Shown: piece by piece, positions 1 through 61,673 of the stretch | How positions within the stretch are numbered: the first letter of the stretch is position 1 | Layout of the letters: every line of letters starts with the position of its first letter | NCBI GenBank assembly: GCA_964304625.1 | Contig: OZ199839.1 | Coordinates: 9,965,201-10,029,200, forward strand | Direction: 5' to 3' | Source of the DNA: Kudoa neothunni | Taxonomy: Eukaryota; Animalia; Cnidaria | DNA length: 64,000 bases | Made by a program: the position numbers and the translations under genes | The notes under the pieces: model-generated | Database searches by the model: none | Seen by the model: the letters and a program-made list of their open reading frames with translations, nothing else | Told to the model about the DNA's origin: nothing

Positions 1-947
1 TCAACATCTCTACATGGGGCGTAACATTCTTGGTTTTCCTTGTTACCTCCACAATGTGAATAGTAAGATGTCGCCTTGTCGCAACTTTCGCATAAACCGC
101 CTATGCTGAAATGGCAAATATCTGCAGAGATAATATTGGTGAATGATATAATATATTTTTGCTTCTCTGGTGTATGGGTCAAATGAACAGTGTATTGTGG
201 TTGATACATCTGGATAGTTGATCGAATAAATTTGTTGGGCATGTAATAATAGTAACTAGGTTGATCTGTGCATTTCATTTCACTGTGGCTTAAGAGGTTA
301 TCAATGTTCATGATACCGTCGAATTCGCCCTCGTTCGAATGACTGGAACTTTTGCTACTCATTTGTGATACTAAGTCTTTAATATAAATTTCGCATTTTC
401 CGATTCGATAAGTTTTTATGATAATATATAAAGGACTTCCGCTGAGTCTGAGTACCATTTTAGGGTAAATCAAAGGCTCTAAATGACGTAGATATTAAAA
501 ATAAAACTAACAATGATATACGTGTTGGAAAACCAACTATATAGGTGTTATCAGTAGAGCGAACGGATACAATTTCACCTGCTGTAACAATAGCATATCT
601 TGAGTTGGCTGTGATAAATTCATACGCACTAATTCCAGTTTCACATGTAAAGTTGCAATATTTTGACATTTTTATATTGCCACTAGCAGAGCATGGATTT
701 AGGTTAGAAATGTTTTCATCATCGATAAATATAGAAGCCACACAACTTTTTTTTTCTCCAACCTCTGTTGAAGTTTTAATAAGGAACTTAGGTAACTCCA
801 ATCTGTTATCAATGTCGTAGGTGATCAATTTACTTTCTCTGTTCAAGCTGCATTGAATTATGTTGATTGTGATATCTGTAATAATGATTTATTCTTGTAT
901 AAGAATATAACTTTACATATAACAATACTAGTAATGCTATGAACCAT
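1..947 (-). CDS. Surface-protein paralogue A (5' part; runs off the window start)
   Basis: Exons 947-917, 875-522 and 478-<1 are joined by 41- and 43-nt GT-AG introns. They translate MVHSITSIVIYITINIIQCS|LNRESK...GFPTQPLIYPK...YYYYMPNKFIRST...PQY...SADICHFSIGG...CGGNKENQECYAPCRDV, with the same motifs as the other copies. The ORF track misses exon 3 because it is open to position 1. Confidence 0.85.
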
Positions 948-3706: not shown

Positions 3707-6566
3707 TTATCCTCTACGTCTCCAACACCAGATTCCAACAACGCAAATAAGTATGAGTGTTGCAATGACAATGACGATTAGAATTATTATTCTAAATAGA
3801 GATTAAATATTAAATTTGGAGGATATGATACTTAGTATTCATTCTAGGCCAACAAAATAACTTTAATTTTAGTAATATATATTAAATTTACGAATTTTGT
3901 CCTCCGGATTCAACTTGATTTTTCTTAGTAACAGTTTCTTCAGTTTCTAATTTATAAATAACAACAAATTACGCAGAACGATATAGATTAACGTTTTTCA
4001 ATTATAACAGTTTGTTTTAGGCCTGAATATATTGTGGTGTAAATGGTCAAATTGTAGGTATGCATGTCATTTATGTTGGTAATGGTAAATTCCTCACAAA
4101 TTGGAGCACCATTCGGACAATCTAATTGATTTATTTCTGAACATTGTTTTATCACTGTTAGGTTAGAGGCTTTTTTGAGCGACAAAATCCAATAACATTG
4201 AGCATCTTGTCCCTGGAGGGGTTTTGGAATCACGGTATTAACATTTAGGTGGTTCTTACCACGATTGATTGTTACAATGAAGGTAGTATCTATATTTATA
4301 TATGATATATAAGTAAATGATTTATTTAATTTATTAACAATAAAATAAAAGTTTAGAAAAAATATCATTTTATATAAACAGATGTTCAAGTTACCTTTAC
4401 GAATCATGATACATTTAGTCCTGGATAGTTCAAGAAATGGCCTCACACACACAAGATAATTGTGAGTGTAATAATAGTGGTCTATAAAATCAATTTGTCT
4501 ACAACTAGGTGGTGTCGAACACGAATTTCGAATTTCGGTTTCATCCACATCGAATTTGTAAGCCCTTTTATATAATGGCTTAAGAATTTTTTCATCATTG
4601 AGGCAAGCATAAGCTAGTTTGAATCCTTGTTGATGCTCAATAAAAACATTGAAATGACATTTATAATTGGATGCTTCGATTTTATTGAATTTCCCTTGGA
4701 TTGAAACAGTATTTTGAGCGTGACTGTAATTAAGATGTAGGGAGCCATCAACTACACAATGAGAATAACTAATCATGATGTAGACGTGCATATTTAAATA
4801 CTTGGAATAATGGCTTCCCTAAAATAGTTATCGTGAACTTTTATTTTAATTTTATAGTCAGCGGTTGGTATAATACCAGTTATAGTATATGTATTATGAC
4901 ACAAACCCCAACAAGCATTTAGATTTTCACAAGTGGCTTCGTAAAATAGGTCGTTATCCATGAGACTAATATAAATAGCACACGTATATTTGAGTGGGTT
5001 GCGACCTCTAAATTCCATAAAATTTCCTTTAATCTTTATTGTACGTTCATTGTCAGTTGGCAATACAGAAAAATTTTCAACACAACTACGTCCTTCTAAA
5101 ATAAAGATTAAAAATTAAAACTGGAAGTTTTAAAACCTTTGGTAAGAAAAACTTTTTCAACATGCCGAACCGCGTTGTTATACATTAACTCTATTAGTAT
5201 ATAATACGATATGGCAGAATCTAGAATAATATATTCTGTCCGATTGCAGATATTTTCACAGTCATAATTCTGATAACAGGAAATTCTATCCCATGCTTCT
5301 ATTTTTAAGGAATCTCCTCGATACATCATTGTATTGCAACTATCATACTCGTAACCGATAAAATCCTTCTGATGATTGAATAATTGTTTATCTAAAACAA
5401 CACTGCGATATGTAATAACAGAGACTAGTCCATTTTGTAAATTTTCAGTTTCATTCCAAACTATTTCAAATATAATTCCATTTGGTATTGTTTATAATAT
5501 AAATAATACCAAATTTTTTATCAATAAATCCCGAATTTATATCATTTAGATCATGGAATCTGGTTCTTATATTCACTTTAACAAATGGATAAAACTCAAA
5601 ATAAAGTTCGATATCTCTGCAAGGAGCATAGCACTGGTTTCCTGATTGATTTATACTGCAATTTGAAACATACGTTGTTGTCTGTTCACCAGTTACAGAT
5701 ATTCCCCCAATACTGAATTGACAGATCTCAGCTGAGAACAAATTTGAAAACGCGAGGAAGTATTTATTATTTCCAGCTGAAGATTTGAATGTCACATTGT
5801 ATTGGGGTTTAAACATTTCTATGTTTGACCTTATATATTTGTTGGGCATAAAGTAATAGTAATAAGGCAGGTTCGCACAACTCACTTGGATAAATGGAAT
5901 CAACTTATCAGTTGGAATAAAGGCTATATATTTTCCTCTTCTAATGTCGTTGAATGAAGAAGCCTCAATGTCATGAAAGTTGTTATTATAATATAATTCA
6001 CAACTTCCATATGTGTAAGATATGACTGTAAGGTAAATAAACCTTACTTTTGTCTGTAAAGATATTTCTGGAGTGACCAAATTTACTATATTTATAAAAT
6101 TTAATTAAAAAATTTATTTAATATAAATTACTAGTTTGAACGCCGATTATATTTTTATTTGTTTCAGATATTTGAGAAACTTCTCTTTCAATATTAACTA
6201 ATGCATATATGACATTTTTCGATCGAAAATTATATTCGAATGTGTTTTGTTCGCCACAACGAAGATTGCAATACATATTTCTCTTTGCAGCGCGACGAAA
6301 AGGACAAATTACGTTGTTTTCAATGATTCTTTCAGAAAATAGTATATAATATCTACATTTCAATGTGGCTGCGTTTGGGATTGTATTGAACAATTTCAAT
6401 GTCATCTTATTCCACTGAAGTGAAACCTCGTAGTTGAATTGTGTAGACTGTGAATTGTTGCTATTCATAATGAATAGGTTAAGCAGAAAAACTATATACG
6501 AAAGAATTAGATTTAAAATTACTACAAGTTAATACATAATATAGTCCAAAATATTAGATTATTCAT
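3707..6566 (-). CDS. Surface-protein paralogue B, 10 exons, 796 aa predicted type I membrane protein
   Basis: Exons 6566-6536, 6491-6132, 6085-5510, 5460-5137, 5095-4802, 4751-4395, 4289-3993, 3946-3892, 3843-3832 and 3791-3707 total 2391 nt, are all GT-AG bounded and stay in frame. Signal-like N-terminus MNNLIFWTILFFLLNLFIMNS. C-terminus IIILIVIVIATLILICVVGIWCW-RRRG*. Confidence 0.88.
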
Positions 6567-20118: not shown

Positions 20119-23100
20119 TTATAGCTCATATTGAGGCTCCTTTGAGGCACTACGTCGCACACAAATAACTATGCAAATAATCAGAACTAGAACAATGATG
20201 ACGACCACTGGAACTATAATCCTAAAATTACATTAAAAAATGAATACCAAATTCTCTACTTTAGATTTTCTTGTAAACTAAATAATGATTAGTTATTTTA
20301 AGAACAAAAATATTACGATTCATAATTTTCATTAACATCTTCAGGTGTGGGGGTTTCCGATTCAGTCTCTTCATTATCCACAGATGAAGTATCAGTAGAA
20401 ATAGTTGACTCTTCGCTATTCACAGTTGAAATGTCTGGAGATGTAGTTGGCGTTTGAGAAGAAGTTTCTGAATTTGGCACAATAGGTTTAGTTGTGGATG
20501 TTTGAACTTCAGAACCTAAAACACAAATAAAATTTTATTGTTACAGTATTTTTGGAATTAGAAAACTGAAAGCGGAGCGTCACTTTATCATACTTATGAG
20601 GAAAGAAAAAATAATAATAATAAAATAAATATTGATGAAAAAAATATTATTTTCATATAACATATTATAATTACTTTCAATAAATATTAATTCAATGTGT
20701 AAAAATAACAGTAAATACATTTTAACCCTCTAACGATCTAAAAAACAATACCCCTAAAACACTTTTGGGGTAAAAATTAGCCCACATTTTTGTTGCACCG
20801 ATGTGTTCAAAAAATAATTTATTGAGGAATACAAAATATCCTTAAATTTAAAACAGTACAATCATTGGAATATTGTATTAATTAGGCCAAATAATCTCAA
20901 ACTAATACCGAGTATGATATTATGGGGATATATTGACGTTCTCCGTAAGTGTTTACAAAATAAAAATATCGTTATCGGCTTATAAAAAGCTCAATAAAAA
21001 AAATAAGCACGACAGTTAATTTCTGCGCTTCAACATCAACAGAATTTTTAAGCATGAGTGAAGAAATAAAACTTGCAGCAATTATGACACTATTTAGAGT
21101 TTCTCTTATCATTTTATTTTTCGCAATAATCTCAGCATGATGATTTTTTATTTAAAATCGGTTCTTTATTCGAATATAAAATTTATTTAAATTTCTTTTG
21201 ATAACTTTTCTGGAGATTCTATTTACAGTGAATTGTACAATTCTTCAGAAATCTCTTTCAGAAAGTTTATCCTTAATTTTTTCTCTGAATTAAATATGTC
21301 ATTGAATAATGCCAATGCATTAATTAACACAATATCGATCATGTCGAAAAGACGATAAGCAGCCATCATCATTTAAACTTTTGATTAGAAAATAATGTCA
21401 ACACCCTATACACATTATCAACCCCACCCTTGGTTGCATTGTAATGCACTATCTTATGAGGTTTAAAATTTTTAGACACATCGATAACAATATTATCAGT
21501 GACACTTGTCTATCCTTATGAATAGCCATTAGTAATAGAACACCTACATAACCTTTAAATTCAATTTCATTGATATCATGTCACTCATCATTAAAATAGT
21601 AATTTCCAAGCACATTATTGAATACATTATGACAAAACTGTCGATTTCTGAGGTAAAGGATAACAAAAAACAATAAATGAATGATTTTATCTTTGAAGAA
21701 ACATATGAAGTAATACCAAGGATGGAATTCGTTATGTTTTCGGCACAGGTTTCTCTCGTAGGTGACATTGATAAACTTAAAGTAATTCCACTTTTACTTT
21801 TTAAATTTTTATAATTAATATCTATGGGATCTATTTATTCGTCCGATATATCATTTTTATCAATAATTTGATCGTCAAATTTGCTTCCAGACAAGGTATA
21901 TTCGCCAATGAAATCACTTGCATCATTCATTTAGAATTATGCACTACGCGCACATACGCATTGTACCACCTAGTCATTTTGTTCATTGTTTTCTTCAAAT
22001 CTACTCGTTTGATTTAACTAATAATTTATATTTCATTACTTACAAGATACTCTTTACATTAAAGTAATAAAAAATGGGGGGGGGGGGAATTTACCCCAAA
22101 AAACGTTAGAGGATAATATTTAAATAAAATTTTTTCGTTTTCAATAGTCTTTTCCAATTTTTTAGTAAAAGTAAATCATTGTAAGTTCCATGAATACTGA
22201 ATATTTGGTGAGATTTAATAAATTAAATAAAAAGATATGCTCAACACAAAATAGTTTTGGGGTGCATTTACCCCAAAATCGTTAGAGGGTTAATAAATTT
22301 ATATTTAGAAGTAAAAACTAACGTTATTCCTAATGATAATATTAACTAAAATATATTGATTTAAAAAATTAGTTTAAGATGTATATAACAGTGTTAAAAG
22401 TAGAAAAATTAAAAAGGACGAATAACCACGTGCCAATATGAGAACGAAAATGCTTATTTATGGTAAAAATGGCTATTGTCACGGATCATAATATCCAGGT
22501 TGGTATAGTTTTGACTGTATTTAATTACTTTTAATCCCTAGTAGAGATAGAAAAGGGCAAAAAATAATTAAATACAACAGATTCTAAAAAATATACTTAA
22601 TACATCAACTATGAATAGGAGTTAACGGTATTAAAAATGGAAACCGCGCAAGCTTTAGTTATCATTTGGATTTAAAACTCCCGTGTCAATAGCCAGTGTT
22701 TTTATGATATTACTCCTGTATAACATATTTATGATTAAAGGGAAAAATTTAGTTCTAGATATCTATAATTCTATAAGGTTTAAAAAAATAACGTTATACA
22801 TAAAAATTGCTAAAGTTAAATTGTAAAAAATTGATGAAAAGATCATGACTAAATTAGTTGTCACTATAAATATTTTTGAAACTTTATATGTATATATACA
22901 TATATATATTAATTTAGCACACTCAAATAATCAAAGTAAAAACAATGATACTTTATACGATATTATGATATAAATGTAAATATAATTAAAATTACTAATA
23001 ACTACTTTAAAACTTAATAATTCAATAATTCTCTAAAAATGAGAGCTATAAAAAATTTTGTTTTCTGATAATTTAACTTTTTATATAAAAAAATTGAAAC

Positions 23101-25764
23101 ACCGATTTTAATCTCTAGATTTATATGAATTGCCGATGATACTAAAAATGTAAATTAATGCTGCATTTTAGTAAAAATTACCAAAATAAATTTAAAATGC
23201 AATATACCCTTGATAACTATTGTTGTTCCGTTCACAGAGAGATCATTCGTGTAGAATAAAGTCAATTTATAGCTAAGATTGCCATCAAGTTGGTTGATGA
23301 GGAACCATTTGCAGAGCGGTACGAAAGCACTGCAATATTTTCTTTCTGATTTGGAACATTGCTTCACCTTAACATATTCTCCGTTTACTAGGGCTAATAA
23401 CTCGTAGTAACATCTTGTGTTTGACGGTTGAAATCGTTGGGGTACCACCGAAGTGACATTTATATAATTATTTTTCAGAATCGCCGTTACATTTATATTA
23501 TTATCTATTTATATTTATATCTGATTAGCACGTTGAATAATAAATGATAAATCTATCACAAAAAAATAATTTTTATTACCTTTTGATATTAATATGCATT
23601 TTGTCTCCGGTAATTCTACAAACGGTCTCACACATACAAGGTAATCATAAGAGCGAATGTAAGGATCAGAAAATTCGAAAATGTTGCACCAAGGAGGATA
23701 TTCGCATGAGTTTCTCATATCTGTTAAATCGGTTATATATGTGTAAGTATTTATTTTTGTTGGTTTTAGAATTTTATTTCCATGAAGACAGGTATAGATC
23801 AAACGAAATGCTTCATCTTGCCTAACAAAAACATTGTAATCGCATTTATACAGGAATGCTGGACCATATGGGAACTCTCCATAAATAGAAAAGTTTCCAC
23901 TTGTAATGTTATAATGGTTGTTGAGTTGGAGGGAGCCATCCACTAAAACATTAACCAATTAAAAAATTTCATTTACAAATTTTTTATTTAAAATATTATT
24001 GTACTTAGCATAAATATATCATTATAATCTTTATTGATTTCAATTTTTATTTTATAACTTGCAGGAGATAACCCAATAATATTGAAATCATCGTTGCATA
24101 ATCCTAGGCATCGAGAGCCATTATCACAAGTCGCTTCGTAGAACAGATCACTTTCCATAGGACTAACATAGATAGCGCAACTATAGCCAAGTTGTTTGCT
24201 TTCAAATTCTTCGAAATTGCCTCGTAATTTAAGAATGTGTCTATTTTCTTGGGGTACGAAAACAATTTTGTCTGTTCCATCAACACCGTCTATATATTAT
24301 ACATAAAATAATATCAATAAATATTTAAATTATTACCTATTTTGACAAAAACTTTAACTACATACATTAGGATAATCGAGATATACATTTCAATAGACAC
24401 CATGTATGATTTAGCGGGTTGTAACTTATCGTATTTGATCGAATCGCATGCATTCACATTAGAGGTTGTAGGATCCCGGTAAACAGCGACATAATCAGCA
24501 GTTGTATTTGGGGAATCTACTCGATATAATTCTGACCTACATGTGCTGTACTCGTAACCAAAACTATCGCTATTTTGATTGAACAATGATTTATCAAGAA
24601 CGAAGCTAAATTCTTTTATTCTCGAGATTAAACCGCCAGCGGAGTTTTCCATGGAGTTAAATACTAAATGCAAATTACTAAGGTGTAGCATAGTTTAATC
24701 ATACAAAACTTTTTATCGATAAATCCTGAATTAATATCAAGCAATTCATGATATCTTGTTTTTATAATTATTTCAACAATAGGGTAATGAGGCAGTTTAA
24801 GATGAACATCTTTACAAGGGGCGAAACATTGTTGAACTGGCCAGTTACCACCACAATTAGATATGTATTCTTTAGATCGCCTGTCTCTCGAATGTACACC
24901 TCCTATGGTAAAATAGCATATATCGGCAGAGAATGAATTTGAAAACGATATTAAATATTCATTTTCTCCTGATGTTGATGCACTTTTTACATTGTATTGG
25001 GGTATATACATGGGTGAATTTGTTTTCATGTATTTGTTGGGCATGTAATAGAAAAAACTAGGTAAGGTATTGCATATTATTTGAAAAAATGGTATGAGAT
25101 CATAAAATTTAACTGATGCAAAATATTTCTCTCCATGAACACTAAACACTCCAGTGGATTCCATCTGTTTAAGTTCATTTTTGTAGTATATGCTACAATC
25201 TACTTCTCGTTTGGCATTAACAAATGTATGTATATTATAATCAGATTTTTGTATAATTATACGGGGAGTAACCAAAAAAGCTAAATAAATTTGTTTATAA
25301 ATAGATTTAAACAAATTATCAGTTTATACCTCGTTGAAAACCAAGTATGGTATTAGTGTAACTGGTGGATCCAGAAGAAATATAGGAAGTTTTAACCAAT
25401 GCATAGAGGTATGGTTTAGAATAGAAATCATACTCAAGCAATATTTCACGGCCACAGTCAAAATGGCAAAAAGCCGGCGGATATATATTGCCTTCCACAA
25501 AGCACAGTGCTCCAGTTTTTATGATTGTTTCTGGAATAAGTATACTGATTTCGCAGTCCAATGCTTGATCAGTACCACTTATCACGTTCAGGTAAAAATC
25601 TAACGTCCACGCACTTGGGTTAATTCCATACTGGAATGATGTTGTTGGATTCGAAGTGTTATATCCATACATTAAGATAATCATAACTTCAAAATAACAA
25701 ATTTAACACATTGAAAAATTATGTAAATATTACCAATGGTTGTTCTAAATACGAGATGATCCAT
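20119..25764 (-). CDS. Surface-protein paralogue C, with long Ser/Thr-rich stalk and a 2.6-kb transposon-containing intron
   Basis: ATG at 25764 (MDHLVFRTTI|VMIILMYGY). Six domain exons over 25.7-23.2 kb are all open. A possible 39-nt exon lies at 23141-23103. Then stalk exon 20515-20317 (GSEVQTSTTKPIVPNSETSSQTPTTSPD...), micro-exon 20277-20260 and TM exon 20221-20119 (IIVPVVVIIVLVLIICIVICV-RRSASKEPQYEL*). Splice phases are consistent. Confidence 0.82.
20726..22289 (-). mobile_element. Internally deleted piggyBac element within an intron of paralogue C
   Basis: TTAA|CCCTCTAACGAT ... ATCGTTAGAGGG|TTAA. The minus-strand remnant KPHKIVHYNATKGGVD (~21417-21465) is the piggyBac third catalytic-D motif. 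An internal copy of the right terminus lies at ~22091-22113. Confidence 0.88.
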
Positions 25765-28267: not shown

Positions 28268-31200
28268 TTATATCTGATAAGTGTCATCCTTCGAATATTT
28301 GTACCTCACGAAAGCTGTCACAGCAATTATGATAACAATCACACCAATGGCCACTGGAATTATTATTCTAAAAAAAATTATTCACTTAAAATATACAATA
28401 GTACTTTAATTTCTTTTTAACGCTAAATAAATTTATTAATGAAAAGTATAAAAATAATTACGATTCGGACTTTTTCGACAGAGGCCTCAAAATTGGTTGT
28501 GGCTGAATCAGACGTTTCGGTAGTTACAGTTTGTGACTGCGAAACTATTGTAGATTCAGAAATATTGATTTCTACAGTTTCTCTGTCAATTTCAGATTCT
28601 AATTTAAAAAAAGGAATAAATAATATGAAGATAAAATAAAATCATAGTTTAATTTTTAATTAGATATATTGAAAATATAACTCCATTAAACCTAGGAAAC
28701 TATTGATGGATAAGAATTAATTAAAAAATATATTCGAATGCATAATTCATAAAAGTTAACGACCTTTATTAATCAATACACAGTTACAGGAGTATTAAAT
28801 TTACTTTTGAACTTTGATTTGTAGAAATAAATATTTTGATTGGTTTGGTAGTTATCTTCTGATTTTATATAGTCAGTAATCATTTTTACTCATCTTGAAT
28901 AATTATAAAATTTAATGGATTATGTAAAAAAGATAAAAATATTTTTCATAAAATTTAATTAAATATTTTAGAAGCAAATAATATATTAACTTTAATTTTT
29001 GTTTCAACGTACAGTCACGTGACCGCGTATGTAAGTATTTATCATGCACATTTTGTTTGGAAAATTGATTGATTGAAATAAATAAATGTTAAATTGTACT
29101 CATAAGCATCAAAAATTACAACGAAATATAATTCAGTGAAATAAAGTGACAACATTATTTTTTAGGATAAGCCAAATCTGTTTCTATAAGGGATTTTAAT
29201 ATATTCGCCTTGGGTAGCATATTAAAAAATGAAGAAAAATTTTAAAGCTCAATAAATACATGATAAACGTCAAAATTTATTTTAATTAAATAAGTTATAC
29301 AATAAACATCGATTAATCATATTAGCTTCGTTTAGTGAAGAATATTTTGTAAAAATTGAACTCTGAGTTAAATAATGTAATAGTTTAAATTTAAAACCGA
29401 AAAACAATGATTTACCTTATTTTATATCATTAAATAATTTTAAATAGCGATATGCTTTACTGTAAACTTACCCTAAAAATTTGCTAAGACCGGACATTTT
29501 GAGGGGGGCACAGTTTATAGCAACCCTTAAGGGATTCCACAAGACCTGTTATTTATTGCATTAAATAAAGTAAATAAATGATACTTTCGATCTACGAAAA
29601 ATTAAAGGATATAATAAAACATAAGTTTTGATATATTCGCCATTATATGTGATAAATATATGAGTGTAATTACCTAAAAGTATGATCAAATTGATTTCAC
29701 TAATTAAAACAATCAGTTAAAAAACCAATTACCATTAAATATACTCATAGTTACTAACAAAACCTATTTTTTTTAAACAAAATATATTGTAAAAAATTAC
29801 GACTATAAATACTATATTATTTTTTAATGATATAAAAAATAAACTACATTCATATCTTTCGATAAATCATAGTTTTCTCAGTTCAAAATCAATATTATAA
29901 TCCATAACGTAAATTAAAGTTAATTATACTTTAAACATTCTAAATGTATAAAATAATTGAAACTTATATCTAAATAATTAAAATTTTATTTTTAACTTTT
30001 GTGAATTCCGAAATCGACTTTAACCTCTAACGATACTGAGGTCGAAGATATTGAGGTCGAATCGACCGCGAAGTAGAATTTAATATCGTATAACTTTTCT
30101 CACTTGATTCCAATGTTCTCTAATTCAAGCTATTCTTTTAAATATATTCTTCAATGTAACTGAGGAAAATTGAATGATTTAGGGTTGTTTATACAGCCTA
30201 AATTTGAAGGATACCCTCTAACGATGATTTGATCATTTGATAATTTGTGGTCGATGCGAACCCATCCTTTTATTTCATCATTTTGTACGTATGTTTCATT
30301 AAATTCTTTTTTGTGAGATATTAAAAAAATTATTGGCAGAATTCTAAGGAAAATCAAGATTAATCCTAGTATTAATCTTACGCAACCTCATCGAACATTG
30401 CTTGTGCACAATTTCGACGATCGATTGCACTAGATAAAATAAAATATTTTTCCCTTCAATTTTAATTTAATACCAGAATAATACATATGGATTCTAATTT
30501 TAATATTTTATTCTATAACGACTAGTCTTCTGGTAGTGAATATTAGGATGTTATAATTGAGGATCTCTCAAGAAACTGACAACGACGATAGGGGCATATG
30601 CGATAATTCATTTATTAGCTGATATGGGTTAGTTTAGAATCTTAAAAATGATATACATCAAGGACGAGCGCAGAAAATATATTTTTTAATTTCTCGCCGC
30701 GCTCACCAATGTATACGACGTTGAGAGTAAAATCAATTATTGAATGTTGTTGTTTGCGGATTGAGTAATCGCCATTTTTGAAATGACCATTCAGTTAGAG
30801 GTTGAATTAAGTGCTTAACATTTTAAAAAAATTAAACCAAGAGCAATCATATATCGTGTTGATAGTGTTATGTTATGGATGAACGTTGCAATGCGTTATT
30901 TTTTTAAGTGCACAAAGCCATAAAGCTACATTTTATGTTTGTTTTAATTTAGCTAAAATTTTAATAACTAGAATCATTAAATTAATGAGTATAGATAAAT
31001 TTAATTTCAGAATGTAACCGCCGTTTCCTTAGTATGTAATATTAACAATACGTAGCGAAGTTGTCTGAATCAGTACTTTTACGGATTATCGATGATTATG
31101 GGGTTAGTAAAATTTAATTTACTCAAAACTTCCTCAAAAGACTTCTTACATATTATATAAACTGAAACAAAATATGTTTTAGTAAAGAAAAATAAAATAA

Positions 31201-33883
31201 AAATGTGGGGTCGATTCGACCCCAAATGATCGTAGGAAGTAAGTCGTTTTTATGATAGTTAAAGGATTAAACTACGTAATGATAGACGCAAACAATTAAT
31301 TAAGTTATTTTAAAATATATTCACTTACTGACTATTGTAGACGAATTTATAGAGAGGTCATCCACGTAAAATATAGTCAAATTGTATTCGAGAGAGTCAT
31401 CAACACGTTGAATGATAAAGGATTTGCAAGTTGGAACGCCACCTCTGCAAAATATTATATTATTCTGGAAACATTGCTTAACCATAACATCTTTTTGGCC
31501 GTTGTTGGTTGACAACTGGAAGTAACATTTAGGATTGAGATGTTGAAATCGATGAGGTACTAGAGCTATGACATTTATCTGGTTACTACTCAAAGTGGCT
31601 GTTATGTTTATATTTGTGTCTATTATAATATAATATATTTTTATATATTATTCCAATAGAAAATCAAACTGATAAATTATTTTTATACTACCCTTTGGTA
31701 TGAATATGCATTTGGTTTCGGACAACTCCTCAAGTGGTTTTACGCAAACAACATACTCATGTGAATAATGGTAGTTATCTGAAAATTCAAACATATCACA
31801 TGGTGGTGGTGTTGGGCATGAGACTCTTGATTCTTCTAAATCTATTACGTAGCTGTGAGCGGAATGGTTTTTCGGTGTTAAAACTTTATCATCATCAATG
31901 CAGTTATATATCAGCTGAAATAAACCATCTTGTTCAACAAAAACATTATGGTGACATTTATGAGATGATGCTGTTGTGTAACGAAACTTTCCGTGGATTA
32001 GAATTGATTTTTTATTGTAGTTGTATTGACATTCGAGTTGTAGAGAACCATCAACTAAATAGTTAAATACACATAAGATGATCTAATTGGAGATTTTCGA
32101 AGTACTCCGCATTATTATATCGTTAAAATCCTTGTGAACATCAATTTTTATTTTATAATTAACTATTGGATTAACATTTGTGATTGTGTACTCATTATTG
32201 CAAGTCCCTCGACAAGAAAGTAGATTTTCGCACGTAGCTTCGTAGAATAGGTCATTATCCATTAGACTCATATAATACACACATGTGTAGTCGAGTTGTT
32301 TGTTTTCAAATTTTTCAAAATTCCCCCGGAACTTCAAATTATTTTTATTGTTTTTTGGCAATAAAACTATTTTGTCATCACCATCATATCCATCTATTTT
32401 TAAAACTATAATATAATAAAAACGTAATAGAGTTGCGACCTGTGCGGAAAAATATAGTTTCTACATGATATAATTTATCTGATTTAAATAATTTGATATT
32501 CATTATATAAGATGATCCTGGCTGTAAATCATCGTATTTTATCCATATACATGAACTACCGCAGTCATTTTCATTATCCTGACAAACAACCTTATGTGTC
32601 TCAACTTTTTTATTTGGGGAATCTCCTCGATATAGCTGTGAAAGGCACTTGTCGTATTCGAAACCTGAGATAATTCGATGTTGGTTGAATATTGACTTAT
32701 CAAATTCGACACTATTTTTTTTCGTTTGCAAGCCCAAACTATCATTTGAGCCATTGGTTGTATTAAATACTAAATTGTGTATAAATGTGATGATATATCA
32801 AAACTAGTAATACCAAATTTTTTAGCAATATGCCCAGAGTTAAGGTCTTCCAATTCATGATATCTTGTTTTTACAATTATTTGAATAGTGGGGTAGAAAT
32901 CAAAATAAAGACCAACATCCTCGCAAGGAGCGTAGCATTGTCTTTGTAGTCCATTTCCTCCACAATCCGATTTATATTCAAAAGATATATAGGTATCCAC
33001 AAGTCCATCCCCTATTGTAAAATGGCAAATTTCGGCCGAAAAAGAATTTTTAAACGATAGAATATATATGTTTCCTTTGGATGTTGATTTGCTCAGCACG
33101 CTATATTGAGGCATGTACTTTGGTATGTTTGATTTCATGTATTTATTGGGCATGTGATAGATGTAACTAGGCAGTTCAGGACATATAATTTTGAAAAGTG
33201 ATATGTGATCATAAAAATGTATGGTTATAGTGTCTACGAACCCTTCTGTATCATGCGTTTCAGTTTTTGTCATCCGTATTTTATCATCCTTATAATATAC
33301 ACTACAATTGACATCTCGAAAAGATTTTGCCGAAACAAAAATATCAGAATCAACCGTATTAACTGTTATTTGTGGTGTGATCAAGTGCACTAAGTTTTTT
33401 ATATTTATTTAAACTTCAAAATATCCATAATGTGTACCTTGTTGAAATCCAATTATATAATTTCTTTTTTTCGAAGGTTCCTCAGGAATTTTCTCAATCG
33501 TAACCAAAGCATAGAGAGATTGTTTGGAACGATAATCATAAGAAAATTGTATTTGATTACCACAGAGAAAATCACAATGGTCCGGCGAAGCTAAAACGTC
33601 CTCGATAGAGCATACTTCTCCGGTTTGTATAATATTTTCTGGAATAAGTATGGTAGTTGTGCATTTTTCATTTCTTGAAATGGACGTATTCAGAGTGAAT
33701 CTCGTTGTTTTCACGTTAGGAAGAATTTCATAATAAAATAACCTGCCCGCGGAAGAATGAATATCTCCTGGTGCAAACGCAGTCCAAGCTGTAAATTTAG
33801 TATTTAATTGTATATATTAATTTTTAAATCTTACAGGCGACAATCCAAAAAATCAGAGAATCCAATTCATTTATACATTTCAT
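28268..33883 (-). CDS. Surface-protein paralogue D (long stalk; apparent 1-nt frameshift just before the TM exons)
   Basis: ATG at 33883 (MKCINELDSLIFWIVA|SWTAFA). Six open domain exons over 33.8-31.3 kb, then a 2730-nt intron, stalk exon 28598-28462, micro-exon 28422-28405 and TM exon 28367-28268 (IIIPVAIGVIVIIIAVTAFV-RYKYSKDDTYQI*). The stalk exon is 137 nt where 136 is needed to keep frame. Confidence 0.78.
30024..31239. mobile_element. Degenerate piggyBac-like element in the long intron of paralogue D
   Basis: Left TTAA|CCTCTAACGAT (like the 20726 terminus) is followed by GAGGTCGAATCGACC. The right end GGGGTCGATTCGACCCCAAATGATCGTAGGAAG|TAA is an imperfect inversion. No convincing transposase remnant. 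Confidence 0.55.
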
Positions 33884-49084: not shown

Positions 49085-51868
49085 TTAAATCTCATCATCA
49101 TTCCTAAAGAAATACCAAATTCCAGTTACGAGACATATAATTGCAAGAATTGGCAAAACCGTTGCGAGAATTATTATTCTAAATCAAATTTTATTAAAAT
49201 GAAAGATTTTATACTTTGTATTATTTCGAGCTCTAAACGATTATACAGTTTGTAAATAAATCATAAAATTAATTGACGGACCTTTGTGTCCCTTTTTCTA
49301 CATCAGATTCTAATACTCCAGGTACCACTAACACACCAAACATCAGTGAATGAAAATATAAAATAAAAATTTTACCTATTGTTTTAGTTCCATTAATATT
49401 TTGGTCTTTGATATAATAAACGGTTAAAGTGTAATTCTGAGGGCCTTCGATATTATTAATCAAGAAATTGGTACAATCGGGGACATTATCTCCACAATCT
49501 GTTCTATTATCTCTCGAACATTGCTTATATGTAATATTCCTTCCATCCTCAAGGTATGTTAGGATCCAATAGCATTTAGCTTCGGTCCCCTCCAGTAGTT
49601 TGGGAAGTACAGAAGTAACATTCGTAACATTTTTACTCCGTATTATTGATAACTTTATTCTAATTTCTATAATTTCAATTTACAATAAATTAAATAAATA
49701 ATATTTTAATCACCTTTCGAAATCTGTAAGCATTTTTCTTCAGTTAATTCTACACAAGGTTTGACACAAATAAAATAATCTTTAGACCGGTAATATTCAT
49801 CAATAAAATCAAATCCGTCACAAAATGGAGTTGTTAAGCATACACCTGGCATGTTCTTTTTATCGGTGGTGAAGTTAAATTTTCTTTCACTTTTTGGTAC
49901 AATGATATCTGTTTCATCAAGACATGTGTAAACCAGTTTAAAATCTTGAGAGTATTCAACAAAGATATTGTACACGCATTTGAATTTTGAAGCTGCTGCG
50001 TACGGGAATTTTCCGCGAATTCTTAATATCTCATCAATGTATTCGTACTGAAGTTGAAGCGAGCCATCAACTAAAAGTTTATATATAGTTATTTCATTCT
50101 TACAAGTAGTTTCGTGCAGTACTAGCAACCATGGTGTATTTGTAATCTCTATGAAAATTAATTTTGATTTTATATTGAATAATGGGAATAATATCCGTGA
50201 TTGTATATTCATCTGTGCATAATCCACGACAAGAATAGACATTGGCACATTTCGCCTCGTAGAACAAACTGCTTTCCTGCAGACTAATATAGAAGGCACA
50301 TGTATATTTTTGTTTATTTTCTGGACCATGAGCAAAAACCCCTTGTATATTCAACCCGCGTGGAACACTTTTTATGTTTAGAGAAAAATCTTCACTTTCA
50401 CTTTCTATGTTTGTGTCTGTAACGATTAAATATGATGACAATATTTTGTATAATACCTGTTACAAAGAAAATATTTTCAACATGGTGAACTAAATCATCA
50501 TTAACCAATTTGACGATTAATTGATATGATCTTGCTGATTGTAAATGTTTAACTTTTATCCGAGTACACAGTGTTTCGCAACCAACAAAGTATTTACATT
50601 CAACCTCCAAAAATAATGATCTTTGAAATGTATCAGCTTGATATAATTCTGTGACGCATCTATTGAACTGAAAACCTGTAATATTGTAATTTGGTTGATT
50701 AAACAGAGTTTTATCAAGAATAACGTATGAATATGTAATTTCACTAATTAAGCCAAATAAATAATTGCTTTGAGTTTGAAATACTAAAATAATAAGATTG
50801 AGAGGTGATAACAAAAAGAGATGTTTACCAAATTTTCTATCAATATATCCAGAATTGTTATCTATTAGATCGTGTTCTCTTGTTTTAATTAATATTTCTA
50901 CAACTTGATAGGGTTGCAGGTGTAGGTTAACATCTCTACAAGGTGCATAACATTCATCTACTTCAGCATTCCCACCACAATAGGATTTGTATTCTTTGGG
51001 CAGTTTTCCTTCTGAGGATATACCCCGTATACTAAAGTGACAAATATCGACAGAAAACGTATTTTTGAAGTTTAGAAAGTATCTTTCGTTTCCAGTTGAA
51101 TTCGAGTAAGTAACAATGTATTGTGGCCTATAAGCTTCTATATTTGACCTCATGAATAGGTTGGGCATGTAGTAATAATAATAAGGCTGGCCTGTACACC
51201 TCATTTCAATCCACGGTATGAGAAGGTTACTCTCGATTATATAATAAAATTCATCTCCATTCGGGTCATGTATATTCCTCATGCTCATTATATGTGATGC
51301 ACCCATCAAAAAAAGTTCACAGCCACCTTTTCGATAGGTTTTTGTCCTAACATAAAAATTATAGGTCCTATTTTGCATTACCACATGCGGCACAACCAGC
51401 CGACCTAAGTATTACATATTTACTTAAAATTAATTATAAATGAATAATACTTATTTGAAATCCCAATATATATTTTTTGGCTGGATTCAGATCATATGTA
51501 TACATTTCTTCCACAACTAAGGCATATAATTTCGCTTTAGATCGAAAATCATATTTTATAATTATTTCGTTGTCACATTTGAAGTAGCAATACTGTGGTC
51601 TTTGAGTATTTATTTTACGATTACATACATCCTTGTTTTTTAGTAGGATTTCAGGAATCAATAATGTAATAGAGCATTCGAAATTGTTATGCTTAGTATT
51701 CATGTTTTTCAAAATAAATTTTGTGATATTCGAATGAGGAGTAATATCATATTCATAGAATTGAGGATCCATAGCCAAACTACCGCCACATATTCCTATA
51801 ATAAAAACTAGAAGAAATTAATATCTTAAAAATGTATTTTATTCAATATTACTAAATATTATCAGCAT
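49085..51868 (-). CDS. Surface-protein paralogue E, 10 exons
   Basis: ATG at 51868 (MLIIF|IFIIGICGGSLA, signal-like). Six open domain exons, a short stalk exon (VVPGVLESDVEKGTQR), micro-exon 49232-49215 and a TM exon IIILATVLPILAIICLVTGIWYFF-RNDDEI*. Confidence 0.86.
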
Positions 51869-53019: not shown

Positions 53020-56000
53020 CCCACCAAGTAAAAATGGGGTAGAAACCTACTCCAGATTTTTTCGATTAAAACAACTTAAAATTTAATGTTATTTAATTTT
53101 GAACAGTATTAGTAAATTCTATTGATTAAATTTTGGGTAAATCTAGAAACGCTACTATTAAGCCACATGTGCACATGCTCTTCTCTCGTTTTGTGATAGA
53201 CGCGTCGTCGTGAGTATTTACCTTTGGTAAGCATTCATTGATTTTACTTCATTATTAGATTACCACGAACTTTGAAGATACCAACAAAATTATAATTACA
53301 AACTTCAAAGCATTTTTACGTTTGATTTAGGAATTTTTAAGAAACTTAAATACTTTAAATTAAATGAGGTAAATAAAACTACGATATACTTCTACTGAAT
53401 TATCTGTAAAAAAAGTCGCTATGTTAAAATGTAACCTCACAATCATTCTTTTTTGTCGCACCAGATAGATTGGAATGTTCCGGTAATTTTATCCAACTAT
53501 TTCTGTAAGTGTGAAAGCTCTGGGACAGATCTACCATCAAAAATAACTTTCATTTTTTTTCGTATGAAAATTTCGAACATGTTTTAAAATCGTTATTATT
53601 TTACTGATTCAGACAGCGTTGTTACAGTAAAAGAAACAAAAATTAATGACTTACTCAGTAAATTGTATTGCTCCGTGTTTTAACAAATAAAATAATTTTT
53701 TTATTAATTTGAGAATGATCAAGCAGCATAAAAGTTGTTTAAACATGTGTATAAAATTTTTATTTTTGAATATCGAATAGAAAGGTCGCGAGATTCAGCA
53801 GAGTCTGCTACCATTAGCCAATAAACCGCCATGCGACACGTGCTAGTTTCGTGCACGCCCCTAAAATTAATAAGACGGCCTGGAGGCAGTGCTTATGCTA
53901 TCGAAAAATTATCAAAATTTTACTATTTTATACAAAACATGCAAATTAATCAATATAACAATACTGATTTAATGTGAAACTAATGTTTTTAAAAAAATTT
54001 TTTTCGTTCTATACCCACCAAAGTTTGCACTGCATACCTTTCACAGACGTGACGTCGCATGTCTGTTATGTGTGCAATGAGTTCGTGAAATACAGTGGAA
54101 GTTGTTTAGATTCGACTCATCGGACACTTATTATTACCTATTAACGAAGAATCATCAGATAAATGCAATTTGGATATAAATCTTCCAGTCGATTGTCTTA
54201 TTGACAAGAATGGAACATTTTAGGAGGCTGGGACTCCATTACCTACTCAAACATCAACTAAAAACTCCTTGTATAATATAATTGTTTCGGTTTCGCCTAT
54301 TTCATAAGATAGAATATTAACTCAATGGTGGAAACATTTCGGTCATTCTGTAATCAACAAGTGTACGGCATGAAAACTGCCCATAAATGTGATGTTTACC
54401 TAGTTTTTTCTTGTAAACAACATTTTTTGATAAATGACACCGTTTACTCGTTATTTTTGTTACGTTTTTGTGTAAATATTGCATATATTAGTGCGTAATA
54501 AACCTTTAAAAATTCTTTTACATTAAAAGACCATTTTTAAGTAAAAAAGAGAGTTTTACTGCAGATAAAACAAGAGCGTACGGCGAAAAATCATAAATAA
54601 GCAAGTAGGTGTGCGTGTGGAATAATGGCTTAACCCTTTCGTGCCCAAAGGTCACCCTAGGGAACAATTGATCATTATGTTCATGACTTTTTAATTATAG
54701 AGAGTTTACAACAGTTTATATGTTTTATAAAATTTGGGGATTTCTTCTATGTTAAAGTATGATAAAACATAAGTTCTTGAAAAAGCATTATATTTTTATT
54801 ACAGCTTACTTTTATAAAATAATGATTGGCAAAGTCATATTTTTGTTGACTTATTACACTATCATTATTAGAGATATTGAAATATAAAAAAATTAAATTT
54901 ATATAACAGCGTAAATATTTATTTTTCAACCATTACATTAAAATTTCAATATGCAACAAATAAATATAAAAAAAATATACGTGTTCCCCAGGATGACCTT
55001 TGGGTACGTGCGCTGATTTTTTTTAACAAAAATGGATCGCAACTTTAACGATACCAAGTTGAATGATAGTCACATTCTAACCGAAATGATTGTTCTTCCA
55101 GACGCCGACTTGTAAGATCCTGACACGGTTTCTGATGATGAGGTTATGTGTTCTACAAACTTTGATGTTGATTTTGAGTGTGATGATGATAACGCAAACA
55201 ATAAATGGACATGTGAAGGACCCTGACCCTCTGTTACGTGCGATATCGTTACGGTTGATGAACTTGAAGATGTGGAGGAGTTGTTTTCTCCAATCGATTA
55301 TTTCAAATTCTTTTTTAGCGAAGCATTGATCGAAATGATTACAAACGAAACTAATGTTTATGTAGTTCAATGTGGTATTAATTTTCTAACAGATATGGAT
55401 GAAATTCAAAAGTTTCTTGGTGTAATTAGGTTGATAGGAATTGTAAGAATGTCGCGTTATCGCTGCTATTGGAGCGGATCATTTGATTACCCCCATGTTT
55501 CGAACGTCTTCTCAAGAAATCGTTTTGATATAATCTCAAGATTGCTTCATTTTATCCATAATGAGAGTATAACAAATGATCAAGTATCACCCAATTATGA
55601 TCGATTCGCTAAAATCCGACCCTTCTTGGAATACCTACGGTCCGCGTTGTTAAAAGTTAAACACGAAGTTTATCATTCAGTTGATGAGCAAATGATACTT
55701 TTCAAAGGGAAGTACAAAGCCAAACAATACCTTCCTAAGAAACAAACTAAATAGGGGTTTAAAGTATTTGCAAGAAGCAGAACTATTGGTATGATGTATG
55801 ATGGAAAAGCTCCAGAGGTTGATAATTCATGTGGTCAGGTTTCTGGTGATTTTGTGATCAAATTGTGCAAGACTCTTCCAAGTCGCAAAACATTTTTCGT
55901 GTATTTTAATAAGTTATTCACCTCTTTTCCCTTGAAAAAAATTTAAAAGAGCGCGATATCTACTCCGTCGGAACGATAAGAAGAAATTGAATCGGAAATT

Positions 56001-58330: not shown

Positions 58331-58802
58331 TATAAAAATAATGCAAAAATCCCCTATGTTGGAAAATATTTATAATATATTAAAGGTAAAATCTAGAATA
58401 ACCACAATCAAATATTAAACTGGTTTCAGTACCTCCGAGGATGAATATTTTTGCAAAAATACTTATAATACGAACTTTTTTGAATGCTCGTGACAATCGG
58501 TGAAGATTACACGTATACTGGTAATTTTGCGTATTATTCTTATGCAGAGTTTATTTAATAAATATATTTTCAAAGTTACATTTTTAATAATTCAACCTGT
58601 AAAATATATATTTGATATATTGTAATAACTTATCAAGTAGCGTACTATTATTATTCCAAATAAATAACTTTAAATCTGATTGCGTGATCTTTTATAAATA
58701 TTAATAAGGACAATAAAAATTAAAACAAATTAGATATTGAATTGAACAAAAACAACAAATAATGAATAAACTGAGGATAAATAATGAAATAACATTTTCT
58801 TT

Positions 58803-61673
58803 TCATAGTTTATGCTTTGATCGAATTAAGATTACATATATAGCAACAACTGTCAAAATTATTCCAATCACAATTGGGATAATGATCGCGGGAATTATTA
58901 CTCTAAAAAAATAACGTCAGATGTTTATAAATTATTTTACTTTATGTTTTTCCTAAAAAATAATTAAGTTTAAATATTTAATTAATCAAAACTTTGATTC
59001 TGATGCAACTGCAACTGAGCTAGATATTTGTGTGACAACATCCTCTTCTTTATCAGTATTCCTTCGTTTCACTAATAACCCAATAATTAACACCGTAATT
59101 GGAAATCAGTGCATACTTATTCCATAAACAATTTCCGTTCCACTTATATTTTCGTCATCCGAGTAGTATATTGTTAAATTATAGTCATAATAGTCTCTAA
59201 GATTGGGAATAAAAAACTTTCTACACAGTGGGACGCTATTTCCACAATCAGATTCATCATTACGTACACACTGTTTCAAAAGTATTGAATTATCTATTCT
59301 ATCAATGGACGTAAGCTTCCAGTAACATGTATTGTCTGATTCTCTAATATCTTTCGGGAGTAGAGCTGTAATGTTAAGTTGATCGTTATCCCAATAATAT
59401 ATTATATTGAGTTTTTTTGAATCTATTATATGAATATGTTAATTTTGTACATAAAAATTAATTTTAAATGTCATGCACCTTGTGCAACTGTTATACATGT
59501 TGTTTCGGATAGTTCTATTTGAGGTTTCAAACAGATGATATACTCCTTCGAGCGATCGAAAGAGTCATAAAATTCAATGACATCACAAGAAGAATAACGT
59601 TCGCACCCAGTTTTATACTTCATCTTATTTTTTATAAAGTTATAAATATCAGTCTGCGTCGAACTGAGAGGAGAATTATCATTAAGACAATAGTGAAGAA
59701 GTCTGAATCCTCCAATATCTTCAACAAAAATTTCAAATTGACAGAGCATCTGGGACGCTATTAGGCATTGAAAATTCCCATATATCTGAACATCTTGGTT
59801 TTTATAACCGGAATATAGTCGGTAGCCACAATCAACTTATGAATAAAATATGTTAAACAATATAAGTAAAAAAAATTAAATTCACATACTAGGGATAATT
59901 GTGTTGTTGTAGTAAGTATTAATATCAACTTTTATTTTATGATCAAAACTTGGAATAATTCCTACAACTTCATATTCTTTATTACATAATCCACGACACG
60001 TTTTAAGACCGATACATGATGCTTCAAAAAACAAGTCGCTCTCCATCAGACTTATATAGTAAACACACGTCATTCCATGTAAGCTGATGTGAGGACTCAA
60101 AACATTCCCTTTTATCTTGAATATACCAGGTTGTTTCCCTGGGATTAATTCAAAATAGTCATTCGAATTATATCCTTCTATATTTATAATATTTTAACTA
60201 TATGACCATAAATAATAAGTAATGTTACTAGTTTCGAAGAATATCTTCTCGACATGCTCTATTTCTTCATTATTACCCAACTTAATGAATAAGGTGTATT
60301 TTTTACCCTCATGTAAACCTTCTATTTTTATACGACTACACAAAATTAGGCATTCTGTATTTCCTTCGCACGTAGTCACGATATCATGCTCTTTTATAGG
60401 AATATCTCTCCAATATAATGTGGAATTGCAAATATTATACTGAGATACATTCTCATTTTCATCATTATCATGTTGTAATGTGAATAATGTATTATCTAAT
60501 ACTATACTGTTGGTTGTTATATCAGAAACCAACCCGTAAGTAAAGCTTTTTTGTGGTCTAAAAACTATAAAAATAATAATTAAGGTATTAATAATAGAAT
60601 AATTATACCAAATTTGTGATCGATAAACCCAGAATTTTCTACGTTCAAGTCATGGTTCTTTGTTCTTATTCTTATCTGTACTATAGGAAATAGCTCATGA
60701 TAAATTTCAACATCCCTGCACGGTGCGTAGCATTCTTTATCTGTTTCTGTTCCGCCACAATTAGATGTGTATTCGTCATTGTTAGCGCCATTCGTTGATT
60801 TAGCTCTAATACTATAGTGACAAATATCTGCTGAAAAATCCTTAGTGAATGAAATAATGTATTTATTTATAGTTGAGGAGGGATTGTACGCCACAATGTA
60901 TTGAGGTTTATAAGTCTCCATAGTAGACCTCATGTATTTGTTCGGCATATAATAAAATAAATTAGGTTGGTAGGTACAATTTATTTCAAAGTAATTAATG
61001 TAGTGATGCATTTCAATAGTGCCGGAATGCTCACCATCATGCACCACATCACCCTCTATTCTAGTCATTTTCTTTTCTGAATTTGCATAATGTACGACGC
61101 ATTTGCCAAAATAATAGGTTTTAACATTAACATTTATATTATTTCCTTCACACATCATGTTCATTCTAAGATGAATCAAAGGAGCTAAATTTTTTCAAAT
61201 ATATTAAACTCAAAAATATATGCTTTACGTATTTGAAAACCAATAATATGTGTTTCCAATTGATGGATGGTATCATCAGACTTGCTTACTCTAATTTTGG
61301 CATATCTTGATTTTTTTGAAAGGAATGTATAGGCATATATTCCATTTTCACATGTAAAACTGCAGTAATTTTTTAAATCTGAAATATTTGTAGGTGGATT
61401 GCATGGATTCCAATCCTTGGTAATTTCGTCCGGTACGAGTATGGAAGCTAAACATTTTTGGTGGTTGTTGTCTACTGTATCCTCTACATTCAACATAAAC
61501 TTGGGGGTTTCCACATTCGTGTCGATTTCATAGGTGATGCTTCTTAATTCAGAGAGACAGCTTCCATACAATATACAGTAAACGATGCCTTTTTAATCAA
61601 TTATTGAAATATTTAGCTGTAAATTATATTTACACAAAATAGTGGAAATTTTAGTGTACGTCGAAGTTATCAT
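58803..61673 (-). CDS. Surface-protein paralogue F, 10 exons
   Basis: ATG at 61673 (MITSTYTKISTIL|CIVYCILYGSCLS). Six open domain exons, a stalk exon (KRRNTDKEEDVVTQISSSVAVASESK), micro-exon 58952-58941 and a TM exon VIIPAIIIPIVIGIILTVVAIYVILI-RSKHKL*. Confidence 0.86.

What the first reader, a model, noticed from the sequence alone, without database searches (positions are those of the whole stretch)
1..61673. Tandem array of six highly diverged, apparently intact type I cell-surface proteins of an unrecognised family (candidate variant-surface-antigen or recognition locus)
Seen: six same-strand genes share one exon plan (signal, 7 modules, stalk, micro-exon, TM, 4-12 aa tail). Cys residues and a few blocks are near-invariant (YYMPNK..S...PQY, FSADIC.F.IG, CYAPC.DV, H.L.D.NSG.I..KF, YISLM..DLFYEA.C, DGSLQL), while intervening loops, stalks and tails differ strongly. 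Frames stay open although nearby transposons are full of stops, which points to purifying selection. The ORF track shows only fragments, so the family is invisible without splicing. Known: tandem Cys-stabilised beta-sandwich surface families include apicomplexan SRS and 6-Cys proteins and the Hydractinia Alr allorecognition cluster. Inference: this is a lineage-specific, diversified surface coat, adhesin or recognition system. I cannot name a homologue, and the array extends past position 1.
Basis: partly seen in the sequence, partly recalled or inferred. Interest (0 to 1): 0.9.

Follow-up and report, generated by a model that had tools for sequence, protein, structure and literature searches.

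The report
Giant orphan surface-protein family in Kudoa
The window holds six diverged copies of a membrane-anchored protein built from Ig/FN3-like modules, part of an undescribed family of several hundred genes in the fish-muscle parasite Kudoa neothunni that is a strong but untested candidate for its variable outer surface.

Summary
The observation largely holds. Six minus-strand genes share one exon plan: a signal exon, six module exons, a micro-exon and a TM exon. Introns are GT-AG, 40-105 nt, and almost all phase 1.

Three points need correcting:
- Gene 1 is cut by the window edge.
- Gene 3 has a decayed TM exon and has lost two cysteines.
- Gene 4's 3' end is doubtful.

The genome matches Kudoa neothunni (Myxozoa).

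The six genes are a long-branched subfamily of a very large family. A search of the window's own genome gave 434-584 candidate exons. All 136-150 that were scored were strong matches, and they lie on all three chromosomes.

No exon of gene 5 (the one tested) matches Pfam, and the family's E_B profile matches no PDB sequence. A search of 1.84 billion proteins returned 18 fragments. AlphaFold models of two exons give Ig-like and FN3-like beta-sandwiches.

Close paralogue pairs are mosaics. Tracts of 100% identity, including introns, abut patches with dS about 0.5. This points to segmental gene conversion with old variable segments retained.

The likeliest role is a diversified surface glycoprotein layer. 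Antigenic variation is not shown. This scan has noted the same family many times elsewhere in this genome.

The parts
1..947 (-). Gene 1 (partial). Signal exon 917-947, E_A 522-875, and E_B from 478 running past position 1.
   Evidence: Motifs; introns of 41 and 43 nt, both phase 1. The genome search shows the match continuing at the window edge.
3707..6566 (-). Gene 2, complete, 793 codons. Exons: sig 6536-6566, E_A 6132-6491, E_B 5510-6085, E_C 5137-5460, E_D 4802-5095, E_E 4395-4751, E_F 3993-4289, micro 3892-3946, TM plus 4-aa basic tail 3707-3791.
   Evidence: Exon table with all frames open; TM hydropathy 3.8; sequence read directly.
23030..25764 (-). Gene 3. Signal exon to E_F (23155-25764) are open. 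The terminal part (about 23030-23150) is decayed with no TM span, and E_C has only 2 of 4 cysteines. It is likely a soluble variant or an early pseudogene.
30936..33883 (-). Gene 4. Signal exon to E_F (31321-33883) are open. The micro-exon and last exon are uncertain. The only hydrophobic candidate ends at about 30936 and is interrupted by lysines.
49085..51868 (-). Gene 5, complete reference model, 786 codons. Exons: sig 51853-51868, E_A 51451-51807, E_B 50829-51404, E_C 50457-50783, E_D 50123-50416, E_E 49714-50070, E_F 49376-49666, micro 49282-49327, TM plus 6-aa tail 49085-49178. The E_B/E_C intron (45 nt) happens to be open in frame.
   Evidence: Sequence read; splice candidates; exon table; no Pfam hit on any exon.
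58803..61673 (-). Gene 6, complete, 814 codons. Exons: sig 61634-61673, E_A 61229-61588, E_B 60609-61184, E_C 60229-60564, E_D 59890-60177, E_E 59479-59835, E_F 59117-59422, micro 58993-59071, TM plus 6-aa tail 58803-58902.

Best explanation
The six genes belong to a massively expanded family restricted to Kudoa and its close kin. The proteins are type I membrane glycoproteins of about 790-815 aa.

Each protein has a cleavable signal peptide and seven disulphide-stabilised Ig-like or FN3-like beta-sandwich modules. Each module sits on its own phase 1-1 exon, except that two share exon E_B. A short juxtamembrane micro-exon follows, then one TM helix and a 4-6 residue basic tail that cannot signal.

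I infer that the proteins stand on the parasite's plasma membrane as an extracellular layer. This layer would mediate or mask contact with the host.

I also infer how the repertoire is kept diverse. Tandem duplication is combined with segmental gene conversion, which homogenises the frameworks and introns but leaves, or imports, old and highly divergent patches inside the modules. Some copies (g3, perhaps g4) have lost the anchor and may be secreted or decaying.

Shown: gene structure, family size, fold class, orphan status, mosaic history.
Inferred: surface location, glycosylation, role at the host interface.
For: - Exon plan and open frames.
- Signal-like first exons.
- TM exons with basic tails in g2, g5 and g6.
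- 8-12 N-X-S/T sequons per gene, and conserved cysteine columns.
- Family size. The E_B profile gave 584 candidates; 136 were scored, all at E <= 6e-61, and 101 had no stop inside the match. The E_D exon gave 434 candidates; 150 were scored, all open. Hits lie on all three chromosomes, in clusters.
- Fold. The E_B model (pLDDT 74) has two beta-sandwiches, and its first module matches Ig constant-type domains at Z 8.2-8.7, rmsd 2.3-2.5 A over 77-80 residues. The E_D model (pLDDT 81) has top lists made up almost wholly of FN3 domains, at Z 6-6.8.
- Orphan status.
- Mosaic evolution in the same array: L051/L052 show introns with 4/187 mismatches, cold exon parts at dS 0.024, and hot patches at dS 0.51 and dN 0.27. 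L053/L054 and L047/L048 carry 1.3-2.8 kb tracts of 100% identity next to regions 8-25% divergent.
- Organism: 40.26 Mb, contigs of 17.15/12.04/11.05 Mb plus an 18.2 kb contig, and (TAAACC)n at only one chromosome end. These match Kudoa neothunni in PMC12239612.
Against: - There is no transcript, protein or localisation evidence.
- Signal peptides and TM helices were judged by eye and by hydropathy only.
- Two of the five copies that can be judged lack a convincing anchor.
- The fold matches have middling Z-scores and carry no functional information.
- omega in the variable patches is 0.5, so positive selection is not shown.
- Kudoa plasmodia live inside muscle fibres, where antibody pressure may be low.
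- No shared upstream motif was found among the six genes.
Confidence: 0.55

Rival explanations
1. The proteins are parasite-to-parasite adhesion or self/non-self recognition molecules. They would act like cnidarian Alr allorecognition proteins or IgSF cell-adhesion molecules. Their job would be homophilic or heterophilic binding between myxozoan cells (cell-in-cell development, plasmodial fusion), not contact with the host.
For: - Kudoa is a cnidarian. Hydractinia Alr genes are a clustered, highly diverse IgSF family whose Ig domains also escape sequence profiles (PMC9546547).
- IgSF genes are up-regulated in one stage of Sphaerospora molnari and were proposed to serve non-self recognition (PMC11792419).
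- The modules have an Ig/FN3-like fold and the proteins a type I topology.
Against: - Hundreds of copies lie on all three chromosomes, not in one complex of about 41 genes.
- The tails are 4-6 aa and cannot carry ITAM or ITIM motifs.
- There are seven modules, not three Ig domains plus a spacer.
- No sequence comparison with Alr proteins could be made here.
Confidence: 0.2
2. The proteins are structural glycoproteins of the plasmodial wall, glycocalyx or spore valves. The large copy number would serve dosage or stage-specific isoforms, and the sequence diversity would be a by-product of relaxed constraint and concerted evolution.
For: - omega is 0.3-1.1 and there is no clear positive selection.
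- Conversion tracts are typical of any tandem array.
- The short tails and many sequons suit a passive coat.
Against: - The cysteine framework is conserved over 23-55% identity, and hundreds of copies stay open. Both argue for selection on each copy.
- Old, highly divergent patches survive inside frameworks that have been homogenised. Dosage alone does not predict this.
Confidence: 0.15
3. The family is a selfish or decaying repeat, such as a transposon-borne or virus-derived envelope-like glycoprotein or a field of pseudogenes, and has no cellular function.
For: - The genome is about 45% repeats (PMC12239612).
- Transposon ORFs lie beside g2 and elsewhere in the window.
- 35 of 136 E_B matches contain a stop.
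- g3 shows decay.
Against: - The eight-intron structure with conserved phases, a signal peptide and a TM exon is that of a cellular gene.
- Copies diverge to 23-55% identity yet stay open.
- No transposase or polymerase ORF is consistently linked to the copies.
- Some of the single stops may be intron sequence at the ends of the match; this was not checked.
Confidence: 0.05

Closest known systems
Metazoan IgSF/FN3 cell-surface proteins (NCAM, contactins, titin-type FN3, class I cytokine-receptor ectodomains)
   Same: - Type I topology.
- A chain of Ig-like and FN3-like beta-sandwiches, with one domain per phase 1-1 exon.
- These are the best structural matches.
   Different: - No match to fn3 or Ig sequence profiles.
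- No conserved Trp and no WSXWS motif.
- Two to three disulphides per module.
- A tail of 4-6 aa with no signalling region.
- Hundreds of paralogues in a 40 Mb genome.
Hydractinia Alr allorecognition family (PMC9546547)
   Same: - A cnidarian lineage.
- Clustered, very diverse type I proteins whose Ig-like domains are invisible to sequence profiles but clear in AlphaFold models.
- Invariant cysteines, and pseudogenes among the copies.
   Different: - Alr has 41 genes in one complex, three Ig domains plus an FN3-like spacer, and many tails carrying ITAM or ITIM motifs.
- Here there are hundreds of genes on three chromosomes, seven modules and minimal tails.
- Homology was not tested.
Apicomplexan SRS and 6-Cys (s48/45) surface families
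   Same: Parasite-specific, expanded families of cysteine-stabilised beta-sandwich surface proteins arranged in tandem arrays.
   Different: - Those families are mostly GPI-anchored, with one to a few double domains and no introns per module.
- No sequence match.
- The anchor here is a TM helix.
Variant surface multigene families (Giardia VSP, Plasmodium var/rif/stevor, and the VSP- and RIFIN-like genes claimed in Sphaerospora molnari, bioRxiv 10.64898/2026.02.11.705288)
   Same: - A large parasite-specific repertoire of membrane proteins.
- Clustering, partly towards chromosome ends.
- Mosaic sequences produced by segmental exchange.
   Different: - A different fold and different motifs. Cysteine content is about 3.5%, with no CXXC arrays and no conserved C-terminal pentapeptide.
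- Switching or exclusive expression has not been shown.

Membership tests
Pfam fn3 / Ig families (sequence-level IgSF/FN3 membership) | Significant match to the family profile HMM | tested here: not met
   No Pfam family at E <= 0.1 for any exon of gene 5. The family profile has no PDB sequence hit at E <= 10.
Ig-like / FN3-like beta-sandwich fold (structural class) | Seven-strand two-sheet sandwich that superposes on solved Ig or FN3 domains | tested here: met
   E_B module 1 against Ig C-type domains: Z 8.2-8.7, rmsd 2.3-2.5 A, 77-80 residues. E_D against FN3 domains: Z 6-6.8, rmsd 2.6-3.3 A, and Foldseek probability about 1 but E about 0.05. The Z-scores are middling. Only 3 of the 7 modules were modelled.
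Class I cytokine receptors | WSXWS motif and a cytoplasmic signalling region | tested here: not met
   No WSXWS-type motif in any exon. Tails are 4-6 aa.
Hydractinia Alr family | All members lie in a single genomic complex | tested here: not met
   Matches lie on all three chromosomes, in many clusters.
Hydractinia Alr family | Sequence or profile homology to Alr domains; a V-set first domain | not testable with these tools
Apicomplexan SRS / 6-Cys | SAG or s48/45 domain profile match and a GPI anchor | tested here: not met
   No Pfam hit. The C-terminus is a TM helix followed by a basic tail.
Giardia-type VSP | [quoted passage not shown] | tested here: not met
   About 28 Cys in about 790 residues. 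The tails differ among copies.
Antigenic-variation system (functional class) | Large diverse repertoire with segmental exchange between copies | tested here: met
Antigenic-variation system (functional class) | Surface exposure and switching or mutually exclusive expression | not testable with these tools
No expression data were seen.

The most novel reading that the evidence does not exclude
Kudoa runs a true variant-surface system built from Ig/FN3-like genes. Hundreds of anchored and secreted copies would be expressed a few at a time. Mosaic gene conversion would shuffle old hypervariable patches into conserved frameworks. This would be a metazoan counterpart of protozoan antigenic variation, possibly derived from the cnidarian Alr-type recognition toolkit.
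Probability: 0.15. Interest if true: 0.9.

Novelty: new variant of a known kind. Interest (0 to 1): 0.62.

Why it matters
How myxozoans persist in immunocompetent fish is an open question, and molecular candidates for their surface are few and disputed.

The published annotation of this genome lists 5,316 proteins and was built from protein hints alone. An orphan family with several hundred members could therefore make up several per cent of the gene set and may be largely missed.

If expressed, the family gives concrete targets for three things:
- stage-specific expression studies;
- diagnostics for a parasite that spoils tuna flesh;
- testing whether an animal parasite uses repertoire variation the way protozoa do.

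It also adds a second cnidarian example of Ig-like domains that only structure prediction can reveal.

Tried and rejected
Two local scripts did read the whole window file on the closed machine.
- Nematode origin. No cuticle-collagen domain and no SL1 RNA, though those controls were uninformative. Settled instead by the match to K. neothunni.
- Rfam on the window: nothing.
- Mitochondrial tRNA scan: nothing.
- Word-indexed protein search with the family profile: no hit.
- Internal sequence repeat between modules: not supported. The best hhalign pair, E_C/E_D, reached probability 37%.
- Donor copies for two hypervariable patches: each 91-nt patch matches only itself in the assembly.
- Shared upstream motif among the six genes: none beyond AT-rich words.
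- Extra family fragments between the genes: none.
- Literature: no paper on this Kudoa family was found in the held library.
- Joined spliced proteins were never built or searched. All searches, folds and alignments were done exon by exon, by reference.
Full report
WHAT IS THERE

I read gene 5 base by base. I then listed all frame-compatible GT-AG introns between neighbouring open stretches in every copy. Each junction between module exons has a short phase-1 intron at the homologous position.

The resulting exon tables give this plan:
- a first exon of 5-16 codons with an ATG and a hydrophobic run;
- E_A, 351-360 nt;
- E_B, exactly 576 nt in all five complete copies;
- E_C, 324-336 nt;
- E_D, 285-294 nt;
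- E_E, 357-363 nt;
- E_F, 291-306 nt;
- a micro-exon of 46-79 nt that ends in phase 2;
- a last exon encoding a hydrophobic span and a 4-6 residue tail.

Models run to 750-815 codons with no stop. The stop frequency outside the genes is 0.077 per codon, so chance openness is about 1e-26 per gene. Pairwise identity per exon is 23-55%, while 27-28 cysteine columns are kept. Each gene carries 8-12 N-glycosylation sequons. No further copy or fragment lies between the six genes.

CORRECTIONS TO THE OBSERVATION

- Gene 1 leaves the window within E_B.
- Only g2, g5 and g6 have a convincing TM exon.
- In g3 the last exon still begins like the TM exons of its relatives but contains stops and no hydrophobic span. 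E_C of g3 has lost two of its four cysteines. g3 is therefore either a soluble form or decaying.
- In g4 the micro-exon is unclear, and the only hydrophobic candidate is interrupted by lysines.
- The Tc1/mariner ORF at 9209-10279 is an open 357-aa stretch.

WHOSE GENOME

The window's assembly has 40,260,978 bases in four contigs: 17.15, 12.04 and 11.05 Mb, plus an 18,219-base contig.

A paper on myxozoan genomes recovered from fish data (PMC12239612) describes Kudoa neothunni with:
- 40.2 Mb in span and a scaffold N50 of 12.0 Mb;
- three chromosomes and a circular mitochondrial contig;
- a median intron of 49 bp;
- a (TAAACC)n telomere at one chromosome end only.

In this assembly the repeat occurs only at the right end of contig 2. 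The identification is therefore secure. The window lies about 2.0 Mb from that telomere.

The paper reports 5,316 predicted proteins. They were obtained from protein hints because few RNA reads mapped.

HOW BIG THE FAMILY IS

Searching the genome itself with gene 5's large exon gave 352 candidates, of which 119 were scored.

A profile of 46 E_B exons gave 584 candidates. Of these, 136 were scored, and the weakest still had E = 6e-61 over the full length. 101 had no stop inside the match.

The 95-residue E_D exon gave 434 candidates. Of these, 150 were scored, and all were open.

The lists are cut off by the scoring cap, not by significance. The family therefore has at least about 150 members and probably several hundred.

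Copies lie on all three chromosomes, in clusters. Many sit in the outer parts of chromosomes (for example contig 1 at 16.3-16.9 Mb, contig 3 at 0.1-1.9 Mb and contig 2 at 9.8-10.9 Mb), but internal clusters exist too.

In a maximum-likelihood tree of 46 E_B exons, the six window genes sit in a long-branched clade with five other sampled copies (100/100). This clade is apart from a larger clade of 35 rows with shorter branches.

WHAT KIND OF PROTEIN

No exon of gene 5 matches Pfam. The E_B profile matches no PDB sequence.

An exhaustive HMMER search of 1.84 billion representatives found 18 proteins. All are short ORF calls on small contigs from a handful of unrelated samples. The word-indexed search found none.

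An AlphaFold model of the E_B exon of g4, built on the paralogue alignment, has mean pLDDT 74 and two beta-sandwich domains.
- Foldseek ranks tandem FN3/Ig proteins first, at E about 6e-4.
- The exhaustive aligner matches the first module to Ig constant-type domains at Z 8.2-8.7, rmsd 2.3-2.5 A over 77-80 residues.

A model of E_D has pLDDT 81. Its top lists consist almost wholly of FN3 domains, at Z 6-6.8.

These scores are middling and show a fold class only. There is no WSXWS motif and no conserved tryptophan. The tails are too short for any signalling motif. Profile-profile comparison does not support the modules as sequence repeats of one another.

HOW THE FAMILY EVOLVES

The window copies are too diverged for rate estimates, so I used three close pairs elsewhere in the family.

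Two genes just beyond the window's end belong to the same subfamily (loci L051/L052).
- Introns 2-5 differ at 4 of 187 sites.
- The 'cold' parts of the exons have dS 0.024.
- Within the same exons there are discrete patches, 204 codons in all, with dS 0.51 and dN 0.27.

A twenty-fold jump in synonymous divergence cannot come from selection on amino acids. It shows that neighbouring segments have different histories. Either conversion homogenises the frameworks and spares old patches, or patches are imported from other copies. Two such patches have no second copy in the assembly.

Two other pairs show 2.8 kb and 1.26 kb of perfect identity next to regions 8-25% divergent.

omega ranges from 0.3 to 1.1 by exon. 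Positive selection is therefore not demonstrated.

INTERPRETATION

Shown:
- a very large orphan family of type I membrane proteins made of Ig/FN3-like modules;
- frames kept open by selection;
- ongoing segmental exchange, with divergent patches preserved.

Inferred:
- the proteins are glycosylated and exposed on the parasite surface;
- their diversity matters at the interface with the host.

Rivals are parasite-to-parasite adhesion or Alr-like recognition, a purely structural coat, and, least likely, a selfish repeat.

Papers on Sphaerospora molnari propose other surface families and note stage-specific IgSF expression. I found no description of this Kudoa family.

LIMITS

- There is no expression evidence.
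- Spliced models were handled exon by exon. The joined proteins were never assembled, searched or folded.
- Signal and TM calls rest on hydropathy and inspection.
- Only three of the seven modules were modelled.

Earlier notes of this scan describe the same family at many other places in this genome. One follow-up reached a similar, cautious reading.

Noticed in passing
window 41281-42205 (+): Two open stretches with Kunitz/BPTI domains (E 2e-6 and 4e-17). They are part of a multi-Kunitz gene sitting on the opposite strand inside the array.
   Followed up: partly
window 9209-10279 (-): An open 357-aa Tc1/mariner-type transposase with DDE_3, HTH_32 and paired-box-like domains. It looks intact.
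   Followed up: partly
window 6842-8076 (-): Pieces with a FLYWCH zinc finger and a weak MULE transposase match, directly upstream of gene 2. MULE expansion is reported for myxozoans in the S. molnari preprint.
   Followed up: no
window 55272-55754 (+): A 160-aa fragment of a piggyBac-type transposase (DDE_Tnp_1_7, E 7e-29).
   Followed up: no
window 20316-20534 and 28426-28641 (-): Two short open stretches very rich in Ser, Thr and Glu, with no Pfam match. They may be mucin-like exons of unmodelled genes or low-complexity noise.
   Followed up: no
L045 (contig 1, 16,489,800-16,495,300) and L053/L047: Main-clade family members carry a long Pro/Thr/Ser-rich insert inside exon E_E. The window subfamily lacks it. 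The insert could be a mucin-like stalk.
   Followed up: no
contig 2, 12,039,536-12,040,069: (TAAACC)n telomeric repeat at one chromosome end only, as published for K. neothunni.
   Followed up: yes
L043, L044, L049, L050 (contigs from four unrelated public samples): Diverged homologues of exon E_B occur on small low-coverage contigs. In one of them the E_A/E_B junction is open in frame. The source organisms are unknown, presumably other Kudoa-like myxozoans in fish or environmental samples.
   Followed up: partly
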